DNA of 60,250 nucleotides, filler included, from Hausera hauseri (Eukaryota), in the NCBI GenBank assembly GCA_046269625.1. It is 10 parts of 10 records of this genome, joined end to end, with 100 filler letters (N's around TTAATTAATTAA, not from the genome) between each part and the next. Parts side by side here need not be neighbours in the genome. Positions count along the whole stretch, not along the records: positions 19,723 to 28,410 come from JBJURY010568783.1; 9 more parts are not named here. One strand, 5' to 3'. The notes beneath the pieces were generated by a model, which searched no databases, had not been told where the DNA came from, and saw only the letters and a list, made by a program, of their open reading frames with translations. Positions within the stretch are counted from its first letter, which is position 1, and the number at the start of each line of letters is the position of its first letter. Below, piece after piece: positions 19,269 to 28,410 of the stretch. The position numbers and the translations under genes were made by a program.

Positions 19269-20166
19269 AACTTCATCGAATAGTTTCAATTCAGAAACTC
19301 CAAAAAATTATGCAGTTAACAAAAATTGGTTAAGCGAGTTTACCTCAAAACGAAATCCAATAATACTCAATTTATAAAACAATTATTGATGCTCAAATTA
19401 TCGTATCACAGAATCAGATCAATCACAGAAAATATCCCGCAGTCAAAATTACCAAATTTGTCAAGAAGTCCACTTTAAGTACAACAATTGGCAACCATAA
19501 TATATCCTATTGGACAAGATTGACCGTATCAACAATATTAAATGACATCTGAAATTTTACGACTACTTCGTAACATTGTTTAGTCAGTCGCATTTTACTA
19601 CTGTTCTGAACTTCTCGAGATTNNNNNNNNNNNNNNNNNNNNNNNNNNNNNNNNNNNNNNNNNNNNTTAATTAATTAANNNNNNNNNNNNNNNNNNNNNN
19701 NNNNNNNNNNNNNNNNNNNNNNACAATAAAAATATAAAAATTGTAAGCTCTTGTTCGGATTTCTACCATATATGGAGTTTTTACATACGATTAGAAATTA
19801 TATTCCTAACTGTTATTTTAAGAGAAGTACTCCTTTATGCGGAGTTATTACAAGTGGAGATACTGCATAAATATATTGGTTTTTAAATCCTATCATATTC
19901 ATCCAACAGTTTACCGAATATGCGACAGAACTGTATAATTTCAGGAAATCTCCTTGTATACATTTTTTTCGAGATTTATTATGCAGGCATCAATAATTGC
20001 CTATCATTATGCACACATGATTTCGAGATCCACTTGATGTAATTGAATTTGTGTGTCAGTATGTACTATATATGCATGCTCTGTGTTTACTGAACAATAC
20101 ACTTTAAAATTTTTCTCTTTGTTTAAATAATATTTATATTTTTTTATTCGAAACTAAAATTTCATT

Positions 20167-23100
20167 ATGGCAAACCTCGATGTGGCTACAGTTCCATTGA
20201 AAGAGGTTAAACGAGTTCAATTCGGTCTTCTCAGTGCAGAAGAAATAGTAAATTTTTCATTATTTTAATTAAATCTATTTCTAATATAATTTTAATTAAA
20301 ATTTTCTAATAATTATTTAGAAGCGAATGTCCGTTGTTGAAGGTATTGAATATCCGGAAAAAACCGAAGAGGGTAAACCGAAGCGGAATGGTCTAATGGA
20401 CCCAAGACAGGGTCCTTGTGACAGGTATTCATTATGTCAGACGTGTGGTGGAAATATTGCCCAGTGTCCCGGCCATTTTGGTCATATGGAACTGGCAAAA
20501 CCAGTTTATCATATTGGTTTTAAAGAAAAGATTTTAAAAATATTACGATGCGTATGTTATAATTGTTCGCGAATTCTAGTCGATATTAAAAACGAGCGAA
20601 TAAGAGAAATTCTAACATCAACGGAAAATTCACCAAATAAACGATTTGAATTTATGTACGAAGAATGTAGGAAAAGGAAAAATTGTTTCATACCTATTGA
20701 AAAAAAAGTCGACTCTATTGAAAAGCAAGGTTGCGGGTATTTGCAGCCACAATTTAAAAGAAACGGATTGGATTTTTTTGTCATTCATCGAAGAAATGTT
20801 GAAAATGAATCCGAAGGAAAGCAACCGTTACTCGCTGAGACAGTTTTGGAGATTTTTCGTCGAATAAGCGATGAAGATTGCCTGATGTTGGGATTCAATC
20901 CGAAATTCAGTCGACCGGATCACATGATTATTTCAGTTTTATCCGTTCCGCCTTTGGCTGTCCGACCGCCGGTTGTTATGAATCATTCCGGAAGATGTCA
21001 CGATGATCTGACTCATAAACTAACTGAAATCGTCAAAGTCAACAATGATATTAAAATGTCGACAAAGAATGGCGTTGCGTCGACAATTATTCAGGAATTA
21101 ATCAATCTTCTTCAATATCACGTAGCGACTCTGTTCGATAACGAATGTGCCTTTTTACCAACGGCAATTCAAAAATCCGGTCGACCGTTAAAGACATTAA
21201 AACAACGATTGCAAGGAAAGCACGGCCGGATCCGCGGGAATCTGATGGGGAAACGTACGGATTACGCTGCACGAACAGTAATAACCGCCGATCCAAATCT
21301 CGATCTCGATCAAGTCGGTGTCCCACGAATGATTGCACACAATCTGACATTTCCAGAAAAGGTGACGCCGTTTAACATTCATTATTTACAGAAACTCGTC
21401 AACAACGGCACACTGTATCCCGGTGCCGAATTCGTTATTCGTGAAAACGGTGAACGAATCGATCTGAAACGACGACCGGACACATCAGATGTTCGATTGC
21501 AATACGGATATACGGTCGAACGTCACATGCTCAACGACGATTTTGTCGTGTTCAATCGTCAACCGACTCTGCACAAAATGTCCATGATGTGTCATCGTGT
21601 GAAAATTCTCCCGTTCTCTACATTCCGATTAAATCTCAGCGTTACAACACCGTACAATGCCGATTTCGATGGTGATGAAATGAATCTCCATTTACCGCAG
21701 TCTCTGGAAACGATTGCTGAAGTATCGGATCTAGCCCGGGTAACGAAATTGGTCGTCACTCCACAGAGTAATCGACCGGTGATGAGTATCGTTCAGGACA
21801 CGCTGACATCAGCAAATAAACTTACTCGTCGTGACGTATTTCTCGATCGTGCCGACATTATGCATCTGTTAATGTTCCATCGGAATTGGGACGGCGTTTT
21901 ACCGAAACCGGCAATCTACCGACCGAAAATGCTCTGGACCGGTAAACAGCTGTTTTCTCTGCTTATTCCCGGCCGGATAAATTGCATCAGAACGCACAGT
22001 ACCCATCCGGAATCGGAAGAATTCGGTCCATTCAAATGGATTTCACCGGGTGATACGAAGGTCATCATTGAAGACGGGGAATTGATTTGCGGAATGCTCT
22101 GTAAGAAAACATTGGGTAGCAGTTCCGGTTCATTGATTCATATCATTGCATTGGAACAGGCCCATGAAGAAACGGGCATGTTTTTCAATAACGTCCAATC
22201 GGTCGTCAACAATTGGCTGTTACTCGAAGGCCATACAATCGGCATTTGCGACACACTGTACGATTCTCGAACTCGAGAGGAAATTAAGTTAACAATTGAG
22301 AAAGCCAAAGAGGCAGTATTCGAAACGATCGATCGAGCACACAATGACGAGCTGCAATCGACACCGGGCAATACGCTGCGGCAGACATTCGAACATACCG
22401 TTAATAAAATCCTCAACGATGCTCGAGATAAAACGGGGAATTGCGCACAGAAATCGTTATCGCAGCACAACAATTTCAATGTCATGGTTATGTCCGGTGC
22501 CAAAGGATCGAAAATCAACGTTTCCCAAGTGATTGCCTGTGTTGGACAGCAGAATGTCGAAGGACGACGAATCCCATTCGGATTTCAACAACGAACTCTA
22601 CCGCACTTTATCAAGGACGATTACGGACCGGAATCGCGGGGATTCGTGGAGAATTCGTATTTGGCCGGTTTGACACCGACGGAATTTTATTTCCACGCAA
22701 TGGGCGGTCGGGAGGGACTCATCGACACAGCGGTAAAGACCGCAGAAACCGGCTATATCCAGCGACGACTGATGAAGGCATTGGAATCGGTGATGGTGAA
22801 ATACGACGGCACCGTTCGTAATCAGATCGATCAGATCATTCAATTTCGTTACGGAGAAGACGGACTCGATGGGGCGTTTGTCGAATTCCAGAATTTGCCG
22901 ACGTATCGATTGAGTACCGTTCAGTTTGAGAAGCAGTTCCGATTGGATGTAACGAATGAGGACGAGCTGCTGGAGTGTCTCGATGAACATGTTGTCCATG
23001 AAATAACGACTCGAACCGATTGCGTTTGTCTGCTCGATGCCGAATGGAATCAGCTTTTTAAGGATCGGCGATCAATTCGGAAAATATTGAAACACGACTC

Positions 23101-26100
23101 AAACGGGCGAGTTGTGCTGCCGTGTAACATTCAACGATTGATTTCCAATGCGCAAAATATTTTCAAAATCGATTTGTTAGCCAAGACGAGTTTATCGCCG
23201 ATTCTCGTTATTGAGGAAGTCAACAGTTTATGTTCGCAATTGATCGTTGTTAGCGGTGATGATGAAATCAGCAAGAAGGCTAATCACAATGCGACGTTGT
23301 TGCTATGCTGCCTTATTCGCAGCTGCCTTTGTTCGAAAAAGGTCGTTCAGGAATACCGATTAACGCAAAAGGCATTCGAATGGATAATCGGTGAAATCAA
23401 AACGAGATTCGATAAGGCATTGGTTCATCCGGGTGAAATGGTCGGCGCATTGGCCGCAGAAAGCCTCGGTGAGCCGGCTACACAAATGACACTCAATACG
23501 TTTCATTATGCCGGCGTTTCGGCGAAAAATGTCACGCTCGGCGTGCCACGACTTAAGGAAATTATCAACGCTAGCAAAAAACCGAAAACGCCATCGTTGA
23601 CCGTTTATTTAACGGGGGGAGCTGCAAAAGACGCAGAAATGGCCAAATCCGTTGCAGCGAGATTGGAACACACGACGCTACGGAAAATCGCGTTCAAATC
23701 GGAAATCTATTACGATCCAGATCCGGAAAATTCCGTCATTGAACGAGATCAGGAATGGGTTCGAACGTATTACGAATTACCGGATTTCGATAGTTCCCAA
23801 ATGAGTCCGTTTATGTTACGAATCGTTCTCAATCGAAAGAAAATGACCGATAAAAAGCTGACGCTTCAAACGATCGCTGAAAAAATCACGGAATATTTCC
23901 ATAACGACATAATTTGCCACATGCCCGATGATAATCTGGATTTGGTTTTGCGTATTCGAATGTTGAAACGAGAGGAATTTCGGGATATTGACGACAAAGA
24001 TACGATGGAAGATCGAAAGTATTTGGAATTGATCGAAAATCTGATATTGGACGAAATTTGTTTGCAGGGAATACCGCAGATAACTCGAGTGTACATTCAT
24101 TTTCCACAAACCGATGATAAGAAAAAGATCGTTATTAGCAAAGATGGATCGTTCGAAGCAAGAAGCGAATGGTTATTGGAAACGGATGGGACTTGTTTGC
24201 AGAAGGTTTTAACGGAAAAGGACATTGACGCATATCGGACAGTTAGTAATCATATCACGGAGATCTTTGAAACGTTGGGAATAGAAGCAGCGCGAAGTGC
24301 CATTGAAAATGAAATGGTACAAGTCATATCATTCGACGGTTCTTACGTGAATTATCGACATTTGGCATTACTTTGTGAAATTATGACTCACAAAGGTTAT
24401 TTGATGTCCATCAATCGCCATGGAATTAATCGGCAAGAAACCGGAGCCCTTGCCAGGTCATCATTTGAGGAAACCGTTGATATTTTAATGGAAGCCGGTG
24501 CGCATTCGGAAATCGATCCAATCAAAGGTGTTTCCGAATCGGTAATATTGGGACAGTTGGCTCAAGTTGGAACGGGCTCATTCGATATTCTAATGAATTT
24601 CGATAAGTGTAATGAAGCCCAGGCTCTTCCAATGCTCGGTGGTATTGCTCAGAATCTCTTTATGGCCGGTGGAGCTACTCCTGTGCATATTGGCTCACCG
24701 AATATTAATGATTATTGTTCATCTTCTCCATTCGGTATTCCATATGAGGCACGATTTTCACCCAGTTCCTTTTCCGATATGGGAACTGGTAATTATGGTT
24801 ACACACCCGTTCAACGTCAACCACCGAAGGATATTCAATTACAGTCGAGCTTTCCGTTGACTCTGAATATCAGTCCTGGAAGTCCTGATAGTTATTCTAG
24901 TCCGGTTTATGGAATGGACAGTCCAGATTACCCAATGTCTCCGACGTATAGTCCAGCGAGTCCGAGATTACAACCACAATATGCCACTTCGTTTTCAAGT
25001 TCCTCATTTAACGATCCAGCTGGTGCAAGTTATAGTCCAATGAGTCCTACTTACAACCCGGTAGGTCCGGGTTTTACTCCGACATCTCCAACTTATAGTC
25101 CAACTAGTCCCAGTTACATTGGTTCATCACCGGCTTACAGTCCATTGAGTCCAACATATACACCGGGGTCACCTTCATATACTCCAGTTAGTCCAAATTA
25201 TTCACCAGTTACTTCCATACTAAGTCCAAATTACTCACCAAGCACTCCATCATACAGTCCAAGCAGTTCCAGCGTTTCTCAATCGTACAATCCACATAAT
25301 TTTGGATCAAGCGTTACGTATTCCCCGGTGACTTATTCGTCATTGTCTAAAAATTTTGCATATGCGCCATCAAATTCTTTGTTTAAACAAAACTTTATCC
25401 AGTATAAATCAGCGGCTCCATCATATTCACCGGCATCTCCATCAACAAGTACATTCTCACCGGCTTCACCGACATCTTCTCTGGGTTCAACATCATTTTC
25501 ACCGGCATCACCTACGTTTATACCAGGTTCACCGACATTTTCTCCTAGCTCTCCAACACTTTCTCCTGGGTCGCCGTCATTTTCACCAGCATCACCTACT
25601 GTTGTGCCTGGTTCACCGGGTTGTTCTCCAGCTTCACCGATTTATTCACCATGTTCACCGGTTTCTCCAACATTTAATTTTTCGCCATTATCGCCAACTT
25701 CGCCTAGTTCTTTGGCATCACCGACTTACTCACCGGCGTCTCCGCAATCGCCTTTTGGTGCTGGTACTGGATTTTTGGCGTCTCCTTCGTACTCTCCAAT
25801 GTCTCCTTCTTATTCGCCGGATACTAATTTTACTCCATCATCTCCGTCGTATTCTCCAACGTCACCCGTATCACAGGCACCATCTTATTCTCCAGTCAGT
25901 TCTAACATTCACAGAACAACATCGTTTACTACGGACTATTCTATTAGCAAGCCGAGTTATTCACCAGCCTCACGTGTGCTTTCAAATTATTCGTCTTCAG
26001 ATGTATTGTCAACTCAAAAATTTGCACCAACTACACCAAGGTATAGTTCTGTACCTTCTTCAATGTATTACTTATCCTTCTCATCGGCACCAAAGTATAC

Positions 26101-27985
26101 ATCTCCTGCCTATTACAAAACAGTTAGTGACGCAGGTTACAGGAAGGCGATAGCAGTGGAATCATTTTCTTCTAAACCTCCAGCATATTCACCGGCAACG
26201 GGGTATAACGTACTAGGTTCAAAAAAGATTGGCACAGATTCTTATTCTCCTACTTCTCCCACTTATTCCCCTATCACAGGCTATGCACCAGCTTCTTCCA
26301 AACAACCATCTGCCAAGTCATATTCACCAGCTTCACCGGTTTATTCACCAACTGCAGGATACACACCAGCTCCTTCAAAAACCCAAACAGCTAATTCCTA
26401 CTCACCTGCTTCTCCAACTTATTCACCTACTACTGGTTACGCACCAGCTCCCACAAATAGAACAGACATCGATTCATTTTCTCCGGCTTCACCGACATAT
26501 TCACCGACGGTTGGGTATGCGCCAGCTCCGAATAAAACTCAAGGCGATTCATTTTCTCCAGCTTCACCAACGTATTCTCCTACAACTGGGTATACTGCTG
26601 CTTCAAATATAGAAATGTTTTCTCCTGCTTCACCTACTTATTCTCCTTCAACCGGGTATACATTTGCTCCAACAAGAAGAACGACTACGGATTCTTTTTC
26701 TCCAGCTTCACCGACTTTTTCTCCCTCGACCGGTTATTCAGCAGCTCCTTCAAAGAAAACTATTGTGGATTCATATTCACCGGCATCACCAGTTTATTCC
26801 CCCTTTACTGGGTACGGTCCCGATAATACTGCAAATTCATATTCACCTGCTTCGCCAAATTTTTCTCCAACATTAGGATATACCAAAGATTCCTTTGGGG
26901 AAAGTTCTCCAGCTTCGCCTAGTTTTTCACAAAGCTCTGGATATGGTCCATCTGGAACGACGGATTCTCCGGCATCTCCGCCATGTGAGACTTCTCCATG
27001 TTATGTACCGGATTCTTATTCACCAACTTCTCCAGTTGACTCTGTTCCCCAAGAATCTCCGACTTCTCCTGCAGAAACACCGAGTACTCCAGCGAGTCAC
27101 TCTTTCTCTCCTGAATCGCCACCCACGTTTCAACAAAGTTCCAAGTCACAATGTTACAGCAGTACCGACATGTATTCACCACCTTATTCTTCCATCACAA
27201 CCGGTTATGCACCATCGAGTACTCATGATTCGACAAATTCTCAACAAGTTCCTGTTGATGACGCTCTATCTCCTGTCTGTCCGATCTTTTCGCCGATTGC
27301 TGAAGATTCTTATCCTCATCTATCACCACCGGATTCCCCAATGAATACCGGTTATGCACCATCGGATTCTCAGTATTTTAGTGTTGTCGATTCGTATTCA
27401 CCAATACCACTTCCATTTTCTCCAAGAGGTCCTGATTTAATTCCGACCTATTCGCAGAGCTTAATTTCTAATGATCATTCACAAAATTCGATTGAATCGA
27501 CTCCAGATTCGGAAAATCGCCAATCGGCCGTCAATGTTGGAGTAAAGACCGAGAGTTGTCCATCATCTTCACCGAACGTTGACAGCCAAATGGATCCATC
27601 AACAGTTGATTTAAAGACGGAAAGTCATTCTAATAACGACAATTCGAGTAGCTCGATAAGTAAATCCATAGGAGATGCTACAGTGAATGAACATTCTCGA
27701 GATCCACACGTTCCAATTAACACAGACGTTGAACGAATTTTGTCAGACAATACCGGCGTGACACCGATTTCACAAAATAATGCCGAATTTTCAAGTTCCC
27801 TTTCCCGAGTCTCGTTGATGTTTTTACGAACAACTTTACAAGATGACAATGATTCTATTCCAGTCGATTCTTCAATAACTGCAGACGTTGTTACTGACAT
27901 ACAAAATGCTCCTGCTGAACTCGATTCTCTTGGCAGTGCGAATGTTGCTATTACGAACGAAGATGATAATTCCAATTGTTCTTGA
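20167..27985 (+). CDS. POLR2A: DNA-directed RNA polymerase II largest subunit RPB1 (exon 1 20167-20247, intron 20248-20320, exon 2 20321-27985; about 2581 aa)
   Basis: Exon 1 [27 protein letters not shown] splices in frame to KRMSV; [61 protein letters not shown]; YSPTSPS-type CTD. Confidence 0.99.
24890..27420 (+). repeat. Degenerate CTD heptad region with higher-order repeats (about 26185-26950)
   Basis: YSP/FSP-x-SP-x heptads; about 10 units of [YF]SPASPx-[YF]SPxxGY plus an 8-12 aa spacer. Confidence 0.95.
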
Positions 27986-28214
27986 GTCTTTATAATATTG
28001 TAAAAGATGTTGTTTGTGTATAATTTAGTATTTGATAGAATTTATTTGATATTCGTAATAAATTTTAGTTTTTGTTATTTTTTATCGAATTACTGAAATA
28101 GTGCAAGTTTTCACATTTGATTTAACACTTTAACTATCCATTTTAATTCACCAGAAATTTGGAATGAATACGAGTGATAAGTTTATAGGTGTAGAAACTT
28201 GGTCTTAAACCTTA

Positions 28215-28410
28215 AACTTATTCTCTATCTTTAATAGTCTGAGTGTGGTGCCCACATTGCCCCACGCAAAAATAACAGTACATAAATCTACATATGGGAC
28301 ATAGTAAGTAAAAGGTGTTGTTTGAATGTTCCAATGGATTCAGTGGAGTAAGGAGGACTTTTTGTAAAAAGGAAATAAAATCTATTTGAGGTCTTATCAA
28401 ATCGTTCGGA
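28215..28410 (-). mobile_element. Dispersed repeat, probably the 3' end of a LINE; second copy at about 41465-41552
   Basis: About 85 bp near-identical in two contigs (GGTGCCCACATTGCCCCA.GCAA.AATAACAGTA.ATAAATCTACATATGGGACAT.GTAAGTAAAAGGTGTTGTTTGAAT); minus frame ends ..PPYSTESIGTFKQHLL..*, like CR1/L2 ORF2 termini. Confidence 0.5.

What the first reader, a model, noticed from the sequence alone, without database searches (positions are those of the whole stretch)
26185..26950. RPB1 CTD rebuilt as about 10 higher-order 'diheptad + spacer' modules
Seen: instead of contiguous YSPTSPS, the distal CTD repeats S-[YF]SPASP[TV]-[YF]SPxxGY followed by an 8-12 aa, often basic spacer (e.g. [52 protein letters not shown]), a 22-26 aa unit also visible at DNA level. 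Known: yeast genetics defined the minimal CTD functional unit as paired aromatics at positions 1 and 8 with SP at 2, 5 and 9, tolerant of spacers between units. Those are exactly the positions conserved here, while the second Ser5-Pro6 is replaced by a fixed x-G-Y. Inference: a natural animal CTD that has converged on spaced minimal units, possibly with a new lineage-specific docking motif (TGY plus basic spacer) and a different CTD code.
Basis: partly seen in the sequence, partly recalled or inferred. Interest (0 to 1): 0.8.

Follow-up and report, generated by a model that had tools for sequence, protein, structure and literature searches.

The report
Flatworm RPB1 tail with spaced diheptads
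The RNA polymerase II largest-subunit gene of an unidentified flatworm carries, in the far part of its tail, ten old copies of a 20-26 residue unit ([Y/F]SPASPT-[Y/F]SPxxGY plus a loose spacer) whose core is kept by selection, an unusual natural variant of the normally contiguous YSPTSPS repeat.

Summary
The piece holds one two-exon gene for RPB1 (2581 aa; Pfam Rpb1 domains 1-7). Its nearest relatives are parasitic flatworm RPB1s at 66-68% identity. Residues 2002-2241 (nt 26243-26962) form ten tandem units, [YF]SPASP[TV][YF]SPxxGY plus a 6-12 aa spacer. A half unit lies upstream and two relics lie downstream.

The units are old and constrained, not recent copies:
- Core synonymous differences are saturated (pS 0.63). 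Third positions at invariant S/P/G columns agree no more than chance (0.31 vs 0.32).
- Core dN/dS is about 0.13, against about 0.7 in the spacer.
- S2, P3, S5, P6, S9, G13 and Y14 are 10/10.

No protein in two very large libraries, and none of 124 other RPB1s examined, has this array.

- The conserved decapeptide does match the yeast minimal unit.
- Units lie 11-16 residues apart, beyond what yeast tolerates, and mammalian cells need penta-heptads.
- Positions 1 and 8 swap Tyr and Phe.
- The spacers are not basic overall.
- The unit reads best as four decayed heptads (7+6+7+6) that were amplified.

No RNA data, close relatives or whole genome were available. The RPB1 core sits on a very long branch, so a specialised paralogue cannot be excluded. 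Verdict: a new variant of a known kind, of moderate interest.

The parts
20167..20247 (+). RPB1 exon 1 (27 codons, [27 protein letters not shown])
   Evidence: Read from the sequence. It matches the conserved N-terminus (V[KR].[VL]QFG[IL]LS..EI) of the flatworm RPB1s and ends at a gt donor.
20248..20320 (+). The only intron, 73 nt, gt..ag, 8% G+C
   Evidence: Joining 20247 to 20321 keeps the frame and gives ...EEI-KRMSV..., as in relatives.
20321..27985 (+). RPB1 exon 2, uninterrupted to the stop codon at 27983-27985
   Evidence: ORF 20327-27985 of 2552 aa. Pfam Rpb1 domains 1-7, E 5e-99 to 2e-37.
24932..25894 (+). Proximal CTD: degenerate heptads in short runs of 2-5 (19 [YF][ST]Px[ST]P motifs, one exact YSPTSPS), including a 42-nt diheptad repeat FSPASPT-xxPGSPx
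25895..26179 (+). Non-repetitive Ser/Tyr/Lys-rich stretch (aa 1886-1980) between the proximal CTD and the module array
   Evidence: 2.1 SP per 100 aa, against 11-14 on either side
26180..26242 (+). Half unit: PAYSPATGY plus spacer [12 protein letters not shown]
   Evidence: Unit profile, 7.4 bits, profile positions 7-26
26243..26962 (+). Ten tandem units [YF]SPASP[TV][YF]SPxxGY plus a 6-12 aa spacer. Unit starts: 26243, 26321, 26399, 26477, 26552, 26618, 26696, 26774, 26840, 26903
   Evidence: Core dN/dS about 0.13 with saturated dS.
27176..27241 (+). Relic unit [22 protein letters not shown]
   Evidence: 1.7 bits, profile positions 6-26. Weak; recognised by the TGYAP..DS motif.
27347..27370 (+). 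Relic TGYAPSDS
   Evidence: weak
27440..27982 (+). C-terminal extension of 181 aa: acidic, Ser/Asn-rich, almost no SP, no known domain or relative
   Evidence: No Pfam hit. No hit in 1.84 billion representatives.
28057..28062 (+). AATAAA, 72 nt after the stop codon (consensus match only)

Best explanation
This is the RNA polymerase II largest-subunit gene of a rhabditophoran flatworm allied to the parasitic Neodermata. Its CTD is halfway along the flatworm trend of heptad decay.

**Origin (inferred).** The distal third arose by tandem amplification of a block of about 78 bp. That block was already a decayed run of four heptads: YSPASPT / YSPTTG / YAPAPSK / TQTANS, i.e. 7+6+7+6 residues.

**Selection (shown).** Since the amplification, long enough ago for synonymous sites to be randomised, selection has kept one complete heptad, the Y-S-P of the next, and an invariant Gly-Tyr in every unit. 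The remaining 6-12 residues have drifted and changed length.

**Function (inferred).** Each unit offers kinases, phosphatases and CTD readers the short epitopes that fit within about ten residues: S2-P3, S5-P6 and S5-P6-x-Y-S-P. It also offers a lineage-specific Tyr at position 14 whose hydroxyl seems to matter. The array therefore acts as an auxiliary set of about ten separated docking and phosphorylation sites. Functions that need longer contiguous heptads would rest on the proximal CTD, with its runs of 2-5 heptads. The array alone is unlikely to be a sufficient CTD.
For: **Identity**
- Pfam Rpb1 domains 1-7.
- Best hits are Spirometra, Schistosoma, Fasciola, Hymenolepis and Echinococcus at 66-67%, with Macrostomum at 62%.
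- The tree groups the protein with Neodermata (SH-aLRT 100) and then with Macrostomum (100).

**Array and conservation**
- Unit layout and per-position counts.
- Core pS 0.63 and pN 0.16 (dS 1.41, dN 0.18). In the five 26-aa units, core dN/dS is about 0.09 and spacer dN/dS about 0.68.
- Third-position identity at invariant S/P/G columns is 0.31, against 0.32 for random draws. This rules out recent duplication or gene conversion as the cause of the amino-acid identity, and it shows the frame is translated.
- Tyr14 is 10/10 (TAT x7, TAC x3), while positions 1 and 8 carry Phe in 4 and 3 units. If Phe were as acceptable at 14 as at 1 and 8 (7 of 20), ten Tyr in a row has a probability of about 0.01.

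**Four-heptad reading**
- Position 16 is Pro in 6/10 units and position 17 is Ala in 7/10.
- BLASTP aligns [14 protein letters not shown] with Macrostomum SPGYSPTSPGYAP--TSP.

**Gene model and assembly**
- Contigs of run X1 tile 24500-28000 with 0-2 differences. Single contigs span 26306-26515 and 26546-27117, and no joints were reported.
- No intron-like AT island lies in the array: 70-nt G+C is 0.34-0.54, against 0.08 for the real intron.

**Context**
- Schistosoma mansoni is on record as an animal whose CTD has no repeat structure (PMC3646058). The five neodermatan CTDs retrieved here show one YSPxSP each.
Against: - No RNA evidence: no run with this sequence is on record as RNA, so transcript continuity rests on the ORF and the selection signature.
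- No orthologue from a close relative could be found. Constraint is therefore measured only between paralogous units within one gene.
- The RPB1 core has an end branch of 0.82 changes per site against a median of 0.15. The gene may be a specialised paralogue rather than the sole RPB1.
- The docking function is inferred from what is known of CTD readers in yeast and mammals; nothing was tested in this animal.
- The four-heptad origin needs two single-residue deletions and rests on a weak alignment.
Confidence: 0.7

Rival explanations
1. One reading: the array is a natural set of spaced minimal functional units that by itself supplies essential CTD function. It would have a new TGY-plus-basic-spacer docking motif and an altered CTD code.
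For: - The decapeptide [YF]SPxSPx[YF]SP is kept in 9 of 10 units, and G13-Y14 is invariant.
- It matches the yeast decapeptide unit and the layout of the viable AR mutant.
- The core is under purifying selection.
Against: - Units are 11-16 residues apart. In yeast 5 Ala between diheptads already cripples growth and 7 Ala is lethal.
- Mammalian cells need penta-heptads and die with diheptad arrays.
- Phe replaces Tyr at position 1 or 8 in seven cells of the table.
- Thr12 is only 6/10, and spacer charge sums to about zero.
- A proximal CTD with 19 heptad cores is also present.
Confidence: 0.2
2. The gene is a divergent, specialised paralogue of RPB1 (for example stage- or germline-specific, or a partly retroposed copy). 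On this view the odd tail is not the CTD of the animal's main polymerase II.
For: - The end branch is 0.82 against a median of 0.15.
- A 7.7-kb coding region has only one 73-nt intron, at its 5' end.
- The protein is 2581 aa, against about 1900 in other flatworms.
- Two X1 contigs match only in part and continue into unlike sequence at 26292 and 27117.
Against: - All seven Rpb1 domains score strongly, and the [10 protein letters not shown] and bridge-helix motifs are intact.
- The 5' intron argues against a plain retrocopy.
- The signature ICHxPDDNL, shared with Neodermata, fits ordinary descent.
- A uniformly fast-evolving lineage explains the branch equally well.
- Only this 8.7-kb piece was available, so copy number could not be tested.
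Confidence: 0.15
3. The array is a neutral by-product. It would be a tandem duplication in a decaying tail whose similarity reflects recency or gene conversion, or an assembly artefact.
For: - The flatworm CTDs retrieved here are degenerate.
- Short-read contigs break inside the array.
Against: - Synonymous sites between units are randomised while seven core residues are invariant.
- The spacers are unique, so each junction is distinguishable, and single contigs cover 210 and 572 nt of the array.
- A 2552-codon open frame in AT-rich DNA is not expected by chance.
Confidence: 0.04

Closest known systems
Synthetic yeast CTDs built from diheptads with spacers (2A-5A insertions; 'AR' [14 protein letters not shown]; '252' [11 protein letters not shown]). 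Work of Stiller, Cook, Liu and Greenleaf, as summarised in PMC6548728 and PMC2894937.
   Same: - One full heptad is followed by Y-S-P of the next.
- Positions 5-7 of the second heptad are replaced.
- Non-heptad residues lie between units.
   Different: - This array is natural, old and under selection.
- Spacing is 11-16 residues from P10 to the next unit, longer than yeast tolerates.
- Tyr and Phe interchange at positions 1 and 8.
- There is an added invariant Gly-Tyr.
- It sits downstream of a separate proximal CTD.
Repeat-less C-terminal extension of Schistosoma mansoni and other Neodermata RPB1 (PMC3646058; proteins P0006-P0011)
   Same: - Same phylum and the nearest relatives by RPB1 core.
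- Loss of contiguous consensus heptads.
- Isolated Y-S-P...G-Y strings such as YSPASVGY occur once in their tails.
   Different: - Neodermatan tails are about 440 aa, with one YSPxSP and no higher-order repeat.
- This tail is about 1130 aa, with 30 heptad cores and a ten-unit array.
- No colinear similarity between the tails was found.
Non-consensus distal CTD repeats of other animals (Drosophila; the mammalian Lys7 repeats)
   Same: - A lineage-specific departure from YSPTSPS in the distal half.
- Evolution by tandem amplification of repeat blocks (PMC3646058).
   Different: - Those stay in an unbroken 7-residue register.
- Here the register is 7+6+7+6 or shorter, and half of each unit has lost all SP motifs.
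Macrostomum lignano RPB1 (P0019), proximal SPGY-type heptads
   Same: Gly directly before Tyr1 followed by Y-A-P (SPGYAPTSPS) aligns with TT-GYAPAP of the unit.
   Different: - Macrostomum keeps about 20 perfect YSPTSPT heptads distally.
- It has no 26-aa unit.

Membership tests
[quoted passage not shown] | Rpb1 domains 1-5 plus the Pol II-specific domains 6 and 7 | tested here: met
   Pfam PF04997, PF00623, PF04983, PF05000, PF04998, PF04992 and PF04990, all far above their cut-offs
[quoted passage not shown] | Catalytic aspartate loop NADFDGD and the bridge helix | tested here: met
   [14 protein letters not shown] and [22 protein letters not shown] are present in the translation and identical to the relatives
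[quoted passage not shown] | C-terminal domain of tandem YSPTSPS-type heptads | tested here: inconclusive
   There are 30 [YF][ST]Px[ST]P motifs but only one exact YSPTSPS. The longest in-register run is 5 heptads. Pfam PF05001 was not reported at E <= 0.01.
[quoted passage not shown] | Being the single housekeeping copy in the genome | not testable with these tools
   Only an 8.7-kb piece of the genome is available. The long branch leaves a paralogue possible.
Array of yeast-type minimal functional units (diheptad units) | Decapeptide Y-S-P-x-S-P-x-Y-S-P in each unit | tested here: met
   S2, P3, S5, P6 and S9 are 10/10 and P10 is 9/10. Position 1 is aromatic in 9/10 units and position 8 in 10/10.
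Array of yeast-type minimal functional units (diheptad units) | Tyrosine, not just any aromatic residue, at positions 1 and 8 | tested here: not met
   Phe occurs in 4 units at position 1 and in 3 units at position 8. That budding yeast needs Tyr there is from my own knowledge and was not checked in a paper here.
Array of yeast-type minimal functional units (diheptad units) | Units close together (up to 5 Ala after a full diheptad viable, 7 Ala lethal) | tested here: not met
   11-16 residues lie between P10 and the next unit. That compares with 9 (5 Ala) and 11 (7 Ala, lethal) in yeast (PMC2894937).
Array of yeast-type minimal functional units (diheptad units) | Sufficiency for viability when it is the only CTD | not testable with these tools
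   This needs complementation experiments. In mammalian cells diheptad arrays are not sufficient (PMC6548728).

The most novel reading that the evidence does not exclude
This would be an animal polymerase II in which a third of the recognisable CTD works as widely spaced diheptad units. Each unit would carry an extra, strictly conserved Gly-Tyr that serves as a lineage-specific phosphorylation or docking site. That would be a natural experiment showing that CTD readers can act on isolated units about ten residues long, and that a new letter (Tyr14) was added to the code in flatworms before the heptads were lost altogether in the parasitic classes.
Probability: 0.2. Interest if true: 0.7.

Novelty: new variant of a known kind. 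Interest (0 to 1): 0.5.

Why it matters
The idea that the CTD works through diheptad units comes almost wholly from engineered yeast and mammalian tails. This gene offers a natural array in which selection itself marks what must be kept: S2-P3, S5-P6, S9-P10, an aromatic ring at positions 1 and 8, and Gly13-Tyr14. It also marks what may drift. The array sits in a phylum that runs from perfect heptads (Macrostomum) to none (Schistosoma, tapeworms), so it could show how an animal dismantles the canonical CTD and which reader proteins go with it. That makes the question testable by comparative genomics of CTD readers and by phospho-proteomics in flatworms. It is not a new kind of system, because lineage-specific CTD variants built by block amplification are well known.

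Tried and rejected
- **Word search with the array**: only four weak CTD hits (E about 1e-4), none with the unit.
- **Full HMMER scan** of 1.84 billion representatives with array plus tail: three weak hits. On reading they are small secreted repeat proteins with DFRPTxPGHSPGVGH units (they look like plant CEP-type peptide precursors, from my own knowledge). I rejected them as chance periodic similarity.
- **Metagenome contig scan**: 194 pattern matches, none confirmed.
- **ESM Atlas**: best score 0.76 to a staphylocoagulase fragment cluster. Meaningless.
- **BLASTP of the tail** against Echinococcus and Macrostomum RPB1: no colinear homology of the array, only heptad-like matches.
- **Sequencing runs**: three DNA-type contig sets and no RNA, so expression and splicing could not be checked.
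- **Papers not held**: Yang & Stiller 2014, Liu et al. 2010 and Stiller & Cook 2004. The exact wording of the yeast 'Y1-Y8, S2, S5, S9' rule is therefore taken second-hand from PMC6548728 and PMC2894937.
- **Rejected readings**: recent duplication or gene conversion, and a hidden intron.
- **Spliced model**: the two exons were joined only inside my own script, for residue numbering. No search tool was given the joined model; all searches used exon 2 by reference.
Full report
**What is in the piece**

The usable piece (19723-28410) holds a single gene on the + strand.
- An ORF of 2552 codons runs from 20327 to 27985.
- Upstream lies a 27-codon first exon (20167-20247) that encodes the conserved RPB1 N-terminus. 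A 73-nt gt..ag intron of 8% G+C follows at 20248-20320, and exon 2 starts at 20321.
- The model is 2581 aa. I joined the two exons only in my own script, for numbering. Every search used exon 2 by reference, and the joined model was given to no search tool.
- Pfam finds Rpb1 domains 1-7, including the Pol II-specific domains 6 and 7 (E 5e-99 to 2e-37). It finds no CTD-repeat family.
- An AATAAA lies 72 nt past the stop codon.

**Whose gene it is**

- The best matches to the 1450-aa core are RPB1 of Spirometra, Schistosoma, Fasciola, Hymenolepis, Anoplocephala and Echinococcus at 66-67% identity. Lophotrochozoans follow at 62-64% and Macrostomum at 62%.
- A quick maximum-likelihood tree of 22 cores puts the protein with the five Neodermata (SH-aLRT 100) and then with Macrostomum (100).
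- Its end branch is 0.82 changes per site against a median of 0.15. The careful tree search did not finish, so the quick tree is what I cite.
- It shares the derived string ICHxPDDNL with the Neodermata, which argues that the grouping is not only long-branch attraction.
- The source is therefore a rhabditophoran flatworm closer to the parasitic classes than Macrostomum is. It is either very fast-evolving or represented here by a divergent copy.
- The protein itself and anything close to it are absent from the protein libraries.

**The observation**

After the linker the tail has five parts.

| Part | Residues | Content |
|---|---|---|
| Proximal CTD | 1565-1885 | 19 [YF][ST]Px[ST]P motifs in runs of only 2-5 in-register heptads; one exact YSPTSPS; a 42-nt diheptad period |
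| Non-repetitive stretch | 1886-1980 | About 95 aa with few SP motifs |
| Array | 1981-2243 | Half unit plus ten full units |
| SP-rich relics | 2244-2400 | Two more TGYAP motifs |
| C-terminal extension | 2401-2581 | Acidic, Ser/Asn-rich, nearly SP-free, no relatives |

The array is a half unit plus ten full units of 26, 26, 26, 25, 22, 26, 26, 22, 21 and 20 aa at nt 26243-26962.
- Consensus: S-[YF]-S-P-A-S-P-[TV]-[YF]-S-P-x-x-G-Y-[AT]-P-A-P-x-[KR]-x-x-x-[DN]-S.
- S2, P3, S5, P6, S9, G13 and Y14 are invariant. A4 and P10 are 9/10.
- Tandem Repeats Finder sees the 78- and 75-nt periods.
Only 'often basic spacer' fails: net charges run from -1 to +2 and sum to +1.

**Is the conservation meaningful?**

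Yes. I compared units by the Nei-Gojobori method.

| Region | pS | pN | dS | dN | dN/dS |
|---|---|---|---|---|---|
| 14-residue core, all ten units | 0.63 | 0.16 | 1.41 | 0.18 | about 0.13 |
| Core, five ungapped 26-aa units | 0.65 | 0.12 | 1.50 | 0.13 | about 0.09 |
| Spacer, same five units | 0.48 | 0.38 | 0.77 | 0.52 | about 0.68 |

- At the six invariant Ser/Pro/Gly columns, the third codon positions of two units agree in 31% of comparisons. Random draws from the same base composition give 32%.
- Gly13 uses all four codons, Pro6 uses four, and Ser5 uses three.
- The units are therefore ancient copies whose DNA has fully diverged. Neither recent duplication nor gene conversion explains the identical residues.
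- Protein-level selection in this frame also shows the stretch is translated.

**Is the sequence sound?**

- Contigs of run X1 tile 24500-28000 with 0-2 differences. Single contigs span 26306-26515 and 26546-27117, and no joints were reported.
- X1 may be the sample the assembly came from, so this is not independent support.
- None of the three runs is on record as RNA, so there is no direct evidence of expression or against splicing.
- Indirectly, every 70-nt window of the array has 34-54% G+C, whereas the gene's one intron has 8%.
- Two X1 contigs match only partly and run into unlike sequence at 26292 and 27117. I could not follow these up.

**Is it found elsewhere?**

- A word search with the array found only four weak canonical CTDs.
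- A full HMMER scan of 1.84 billion representatives with array plus tail found three weak hits and nothing at E < 1e-10. On reading, these are small secreted proteins with DFRPTxPGHSPGVGH repeats, which is chance periodic similarity.
- A metagenome scan confirmed nothing.
- Among the 124 RPB1s retrieved, [YF]SPxxGY occurs at most once, in three plant proteins, against ten times here.
- The five neodermatan tails examined by eye are about 440 aa with one YSPxSP each. This fits the published note that the S. mansoni extension has no repeat structure (PMC3646058).
- Macrostomum keeps about 20 perfect YSPTSPT heptads. This tail is intermediate between those two states.
- Full-text searches found no description of such an array in flatworms. 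One planarian paper says only that the heptad repeat is found in S. mediterranea (PMC6169894).
- Closer free-living flatworms could not be examined, so the array may be wider than one species.

**How the unit is best read**

- The conserved [YF]SPxSPx[YF]SP is the decapeptide defined as the irreducible unit in S. cerevisiae and S. pombe.
- Loss of S5-P6-S7 in the second heptad mirrors the viable AR ([14 protein letters not shown]) and 252 ([11 protein letters not shown]) mutants (PMC6548728).

Two points temper it.
- The start of the 'spacer' is itself conserved: Y14-[AT]-P(6/10)-A(7/10)-P(5/10). It looks like a third heptad, Y-A-P-A-P-S-K, in a register shifted by one. BLASTP aligns [14 protein letters not shown] with Macrostomum SPGYSPTSPGYAP--TSP, where Gly is residue 7 before Tyr1. 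The 26-mer is thus plausibly four decayed heptads (7+6+7+6) amplified as a block. That is the usual way CTDs evolve, so no convergence on a minimal unit need be assumed.
- Tyr14 is the only strictly Tyr position (10/10; TAT x7, TAC x3). Positions 1 and 8 take Phe in 4 and 3 units. If Phe were equally acceptable at 14, the chance of ten Tyr is about 0.01. The ring seems to be what matters at positions 1 and 8, and the hydroxyl at 14.

**How it most likely works**

- Shown: the array is part of the RPB1 reading frame, it is old, and its core is under purifying selection.
- Inferred: each unit presents three Ser-Pro sites and the S5-P6-x-Y-S-P stretch, which is enough for enzymes and readers that contact about ten residues or fewer. 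It also presents a lineage-specific Tyr.
- Units are 11-16 residues apart, counted from P10 to the next position 1.
- In yeast, growth falls with each Ala inserted between diheptads. Five Ala (9 residues by the same count) gives sick cells and seven Ala (11 residues) is lethal (PMC2894937).
- In mammalian cells the minimal unit is a penta-heptad, and doubling the spacer is deleterious (PMC6548728).
- By those yardsticks the array alone should not be a sufficient CTD. I take it to be an auxiliary platform beside the proximal CTD.

**Rivals**

- A specialised paralogue (0.15) is suggested by the long branch, the near-absence of introns, the 2581-aa length and the partly matching X1 contigs. The intact catalytic core, the retained 5' intron and the possibility of a generally fast lineage speak against it. 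It cannot be tested on an 8.7-kb piece.
- A neutral by-product or assembly artefact (0.04) is contradicted and by the unique spacers that make each junction distinct.

**Verdict**

- The thing is a lineage-specific higher-order repeat in a decaying flatworm CTD. It is a new variant of a known kind, not found in any protein library I could search.
- Its value is as a natural read-out of which CTD residues selection keeps when heptads are pulled apart, and as a possible intermediate towards the repeat-less tails of parasitic flatworms.
- Interest: 0.5.

Noticed in passing
window 20167-27985: A 7.7-kb RPB1 coding region is interrupted by a single 73-nt intron (8% G+C) after codon 27. The rest is one exon. 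The pattern (only the 5'-most intron kept) suggests massive intron loss or a partly retroposed origin.
   Followed up: partly
window 20327-24600 (RPB1 core): The conserved core sits on an end branch of 0.82 changes per site, about five times the median of 21 other animals, although all catalytic motifs are intact. Either the lineage is very fast-evolving or this is a divergent copy.
   Followed up: partly
window 27440-27982: A 181-aa acidic, Ser/Asn-rich extension follows the CTD. It has almost no SP motifs, no Pfam domain and no relatives in 1.84 billion representatives. Other flatworm RPB1s end about 650 residues earlier.
   Followed up: partly
window 25541-25810: Runs X2 and X3, labelled as two other organisms from two other studies, each hold one low-depth contig identical to this stretch of the proximal CTD, and both end at exactly 25810. 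This could be carry-over between libraries, the same animal living with other hosts, or a very close relative. It is unexplained.
   Followed up: no
window 26292 and 27117: Two contigs of run X1 match the array only partly and continue into unrelated sequence: 70 nt before 26292 and 26 nt after 27117. This could be a second allele with another unit number, a second locus, or a graph artefact.
   Followed up: no
window 25451-25661: The proximal CTD has its own diheptad period of 42 nt: [14 protein letters not shown] / [14 protein letters not shown] / [14 protein letters not shown] / [14 protein letters not shown]. The second heptad has lost Ser2 and carries Gly4, and Phe rather than Tyr is the usual first residue.
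   Followed up: partly
P0006-P0011 (neodermatan RPB1 tails): Each parasitic-flatworm tail has one string such as YSPTSVGY, YSPASVGY or YEPMSVGY, and a GTGYGTSY near the end. These may be the last traces of the same Y-S-P..G-Y unit. BLASTP gives no significant colinear match.
   Followed up: partly
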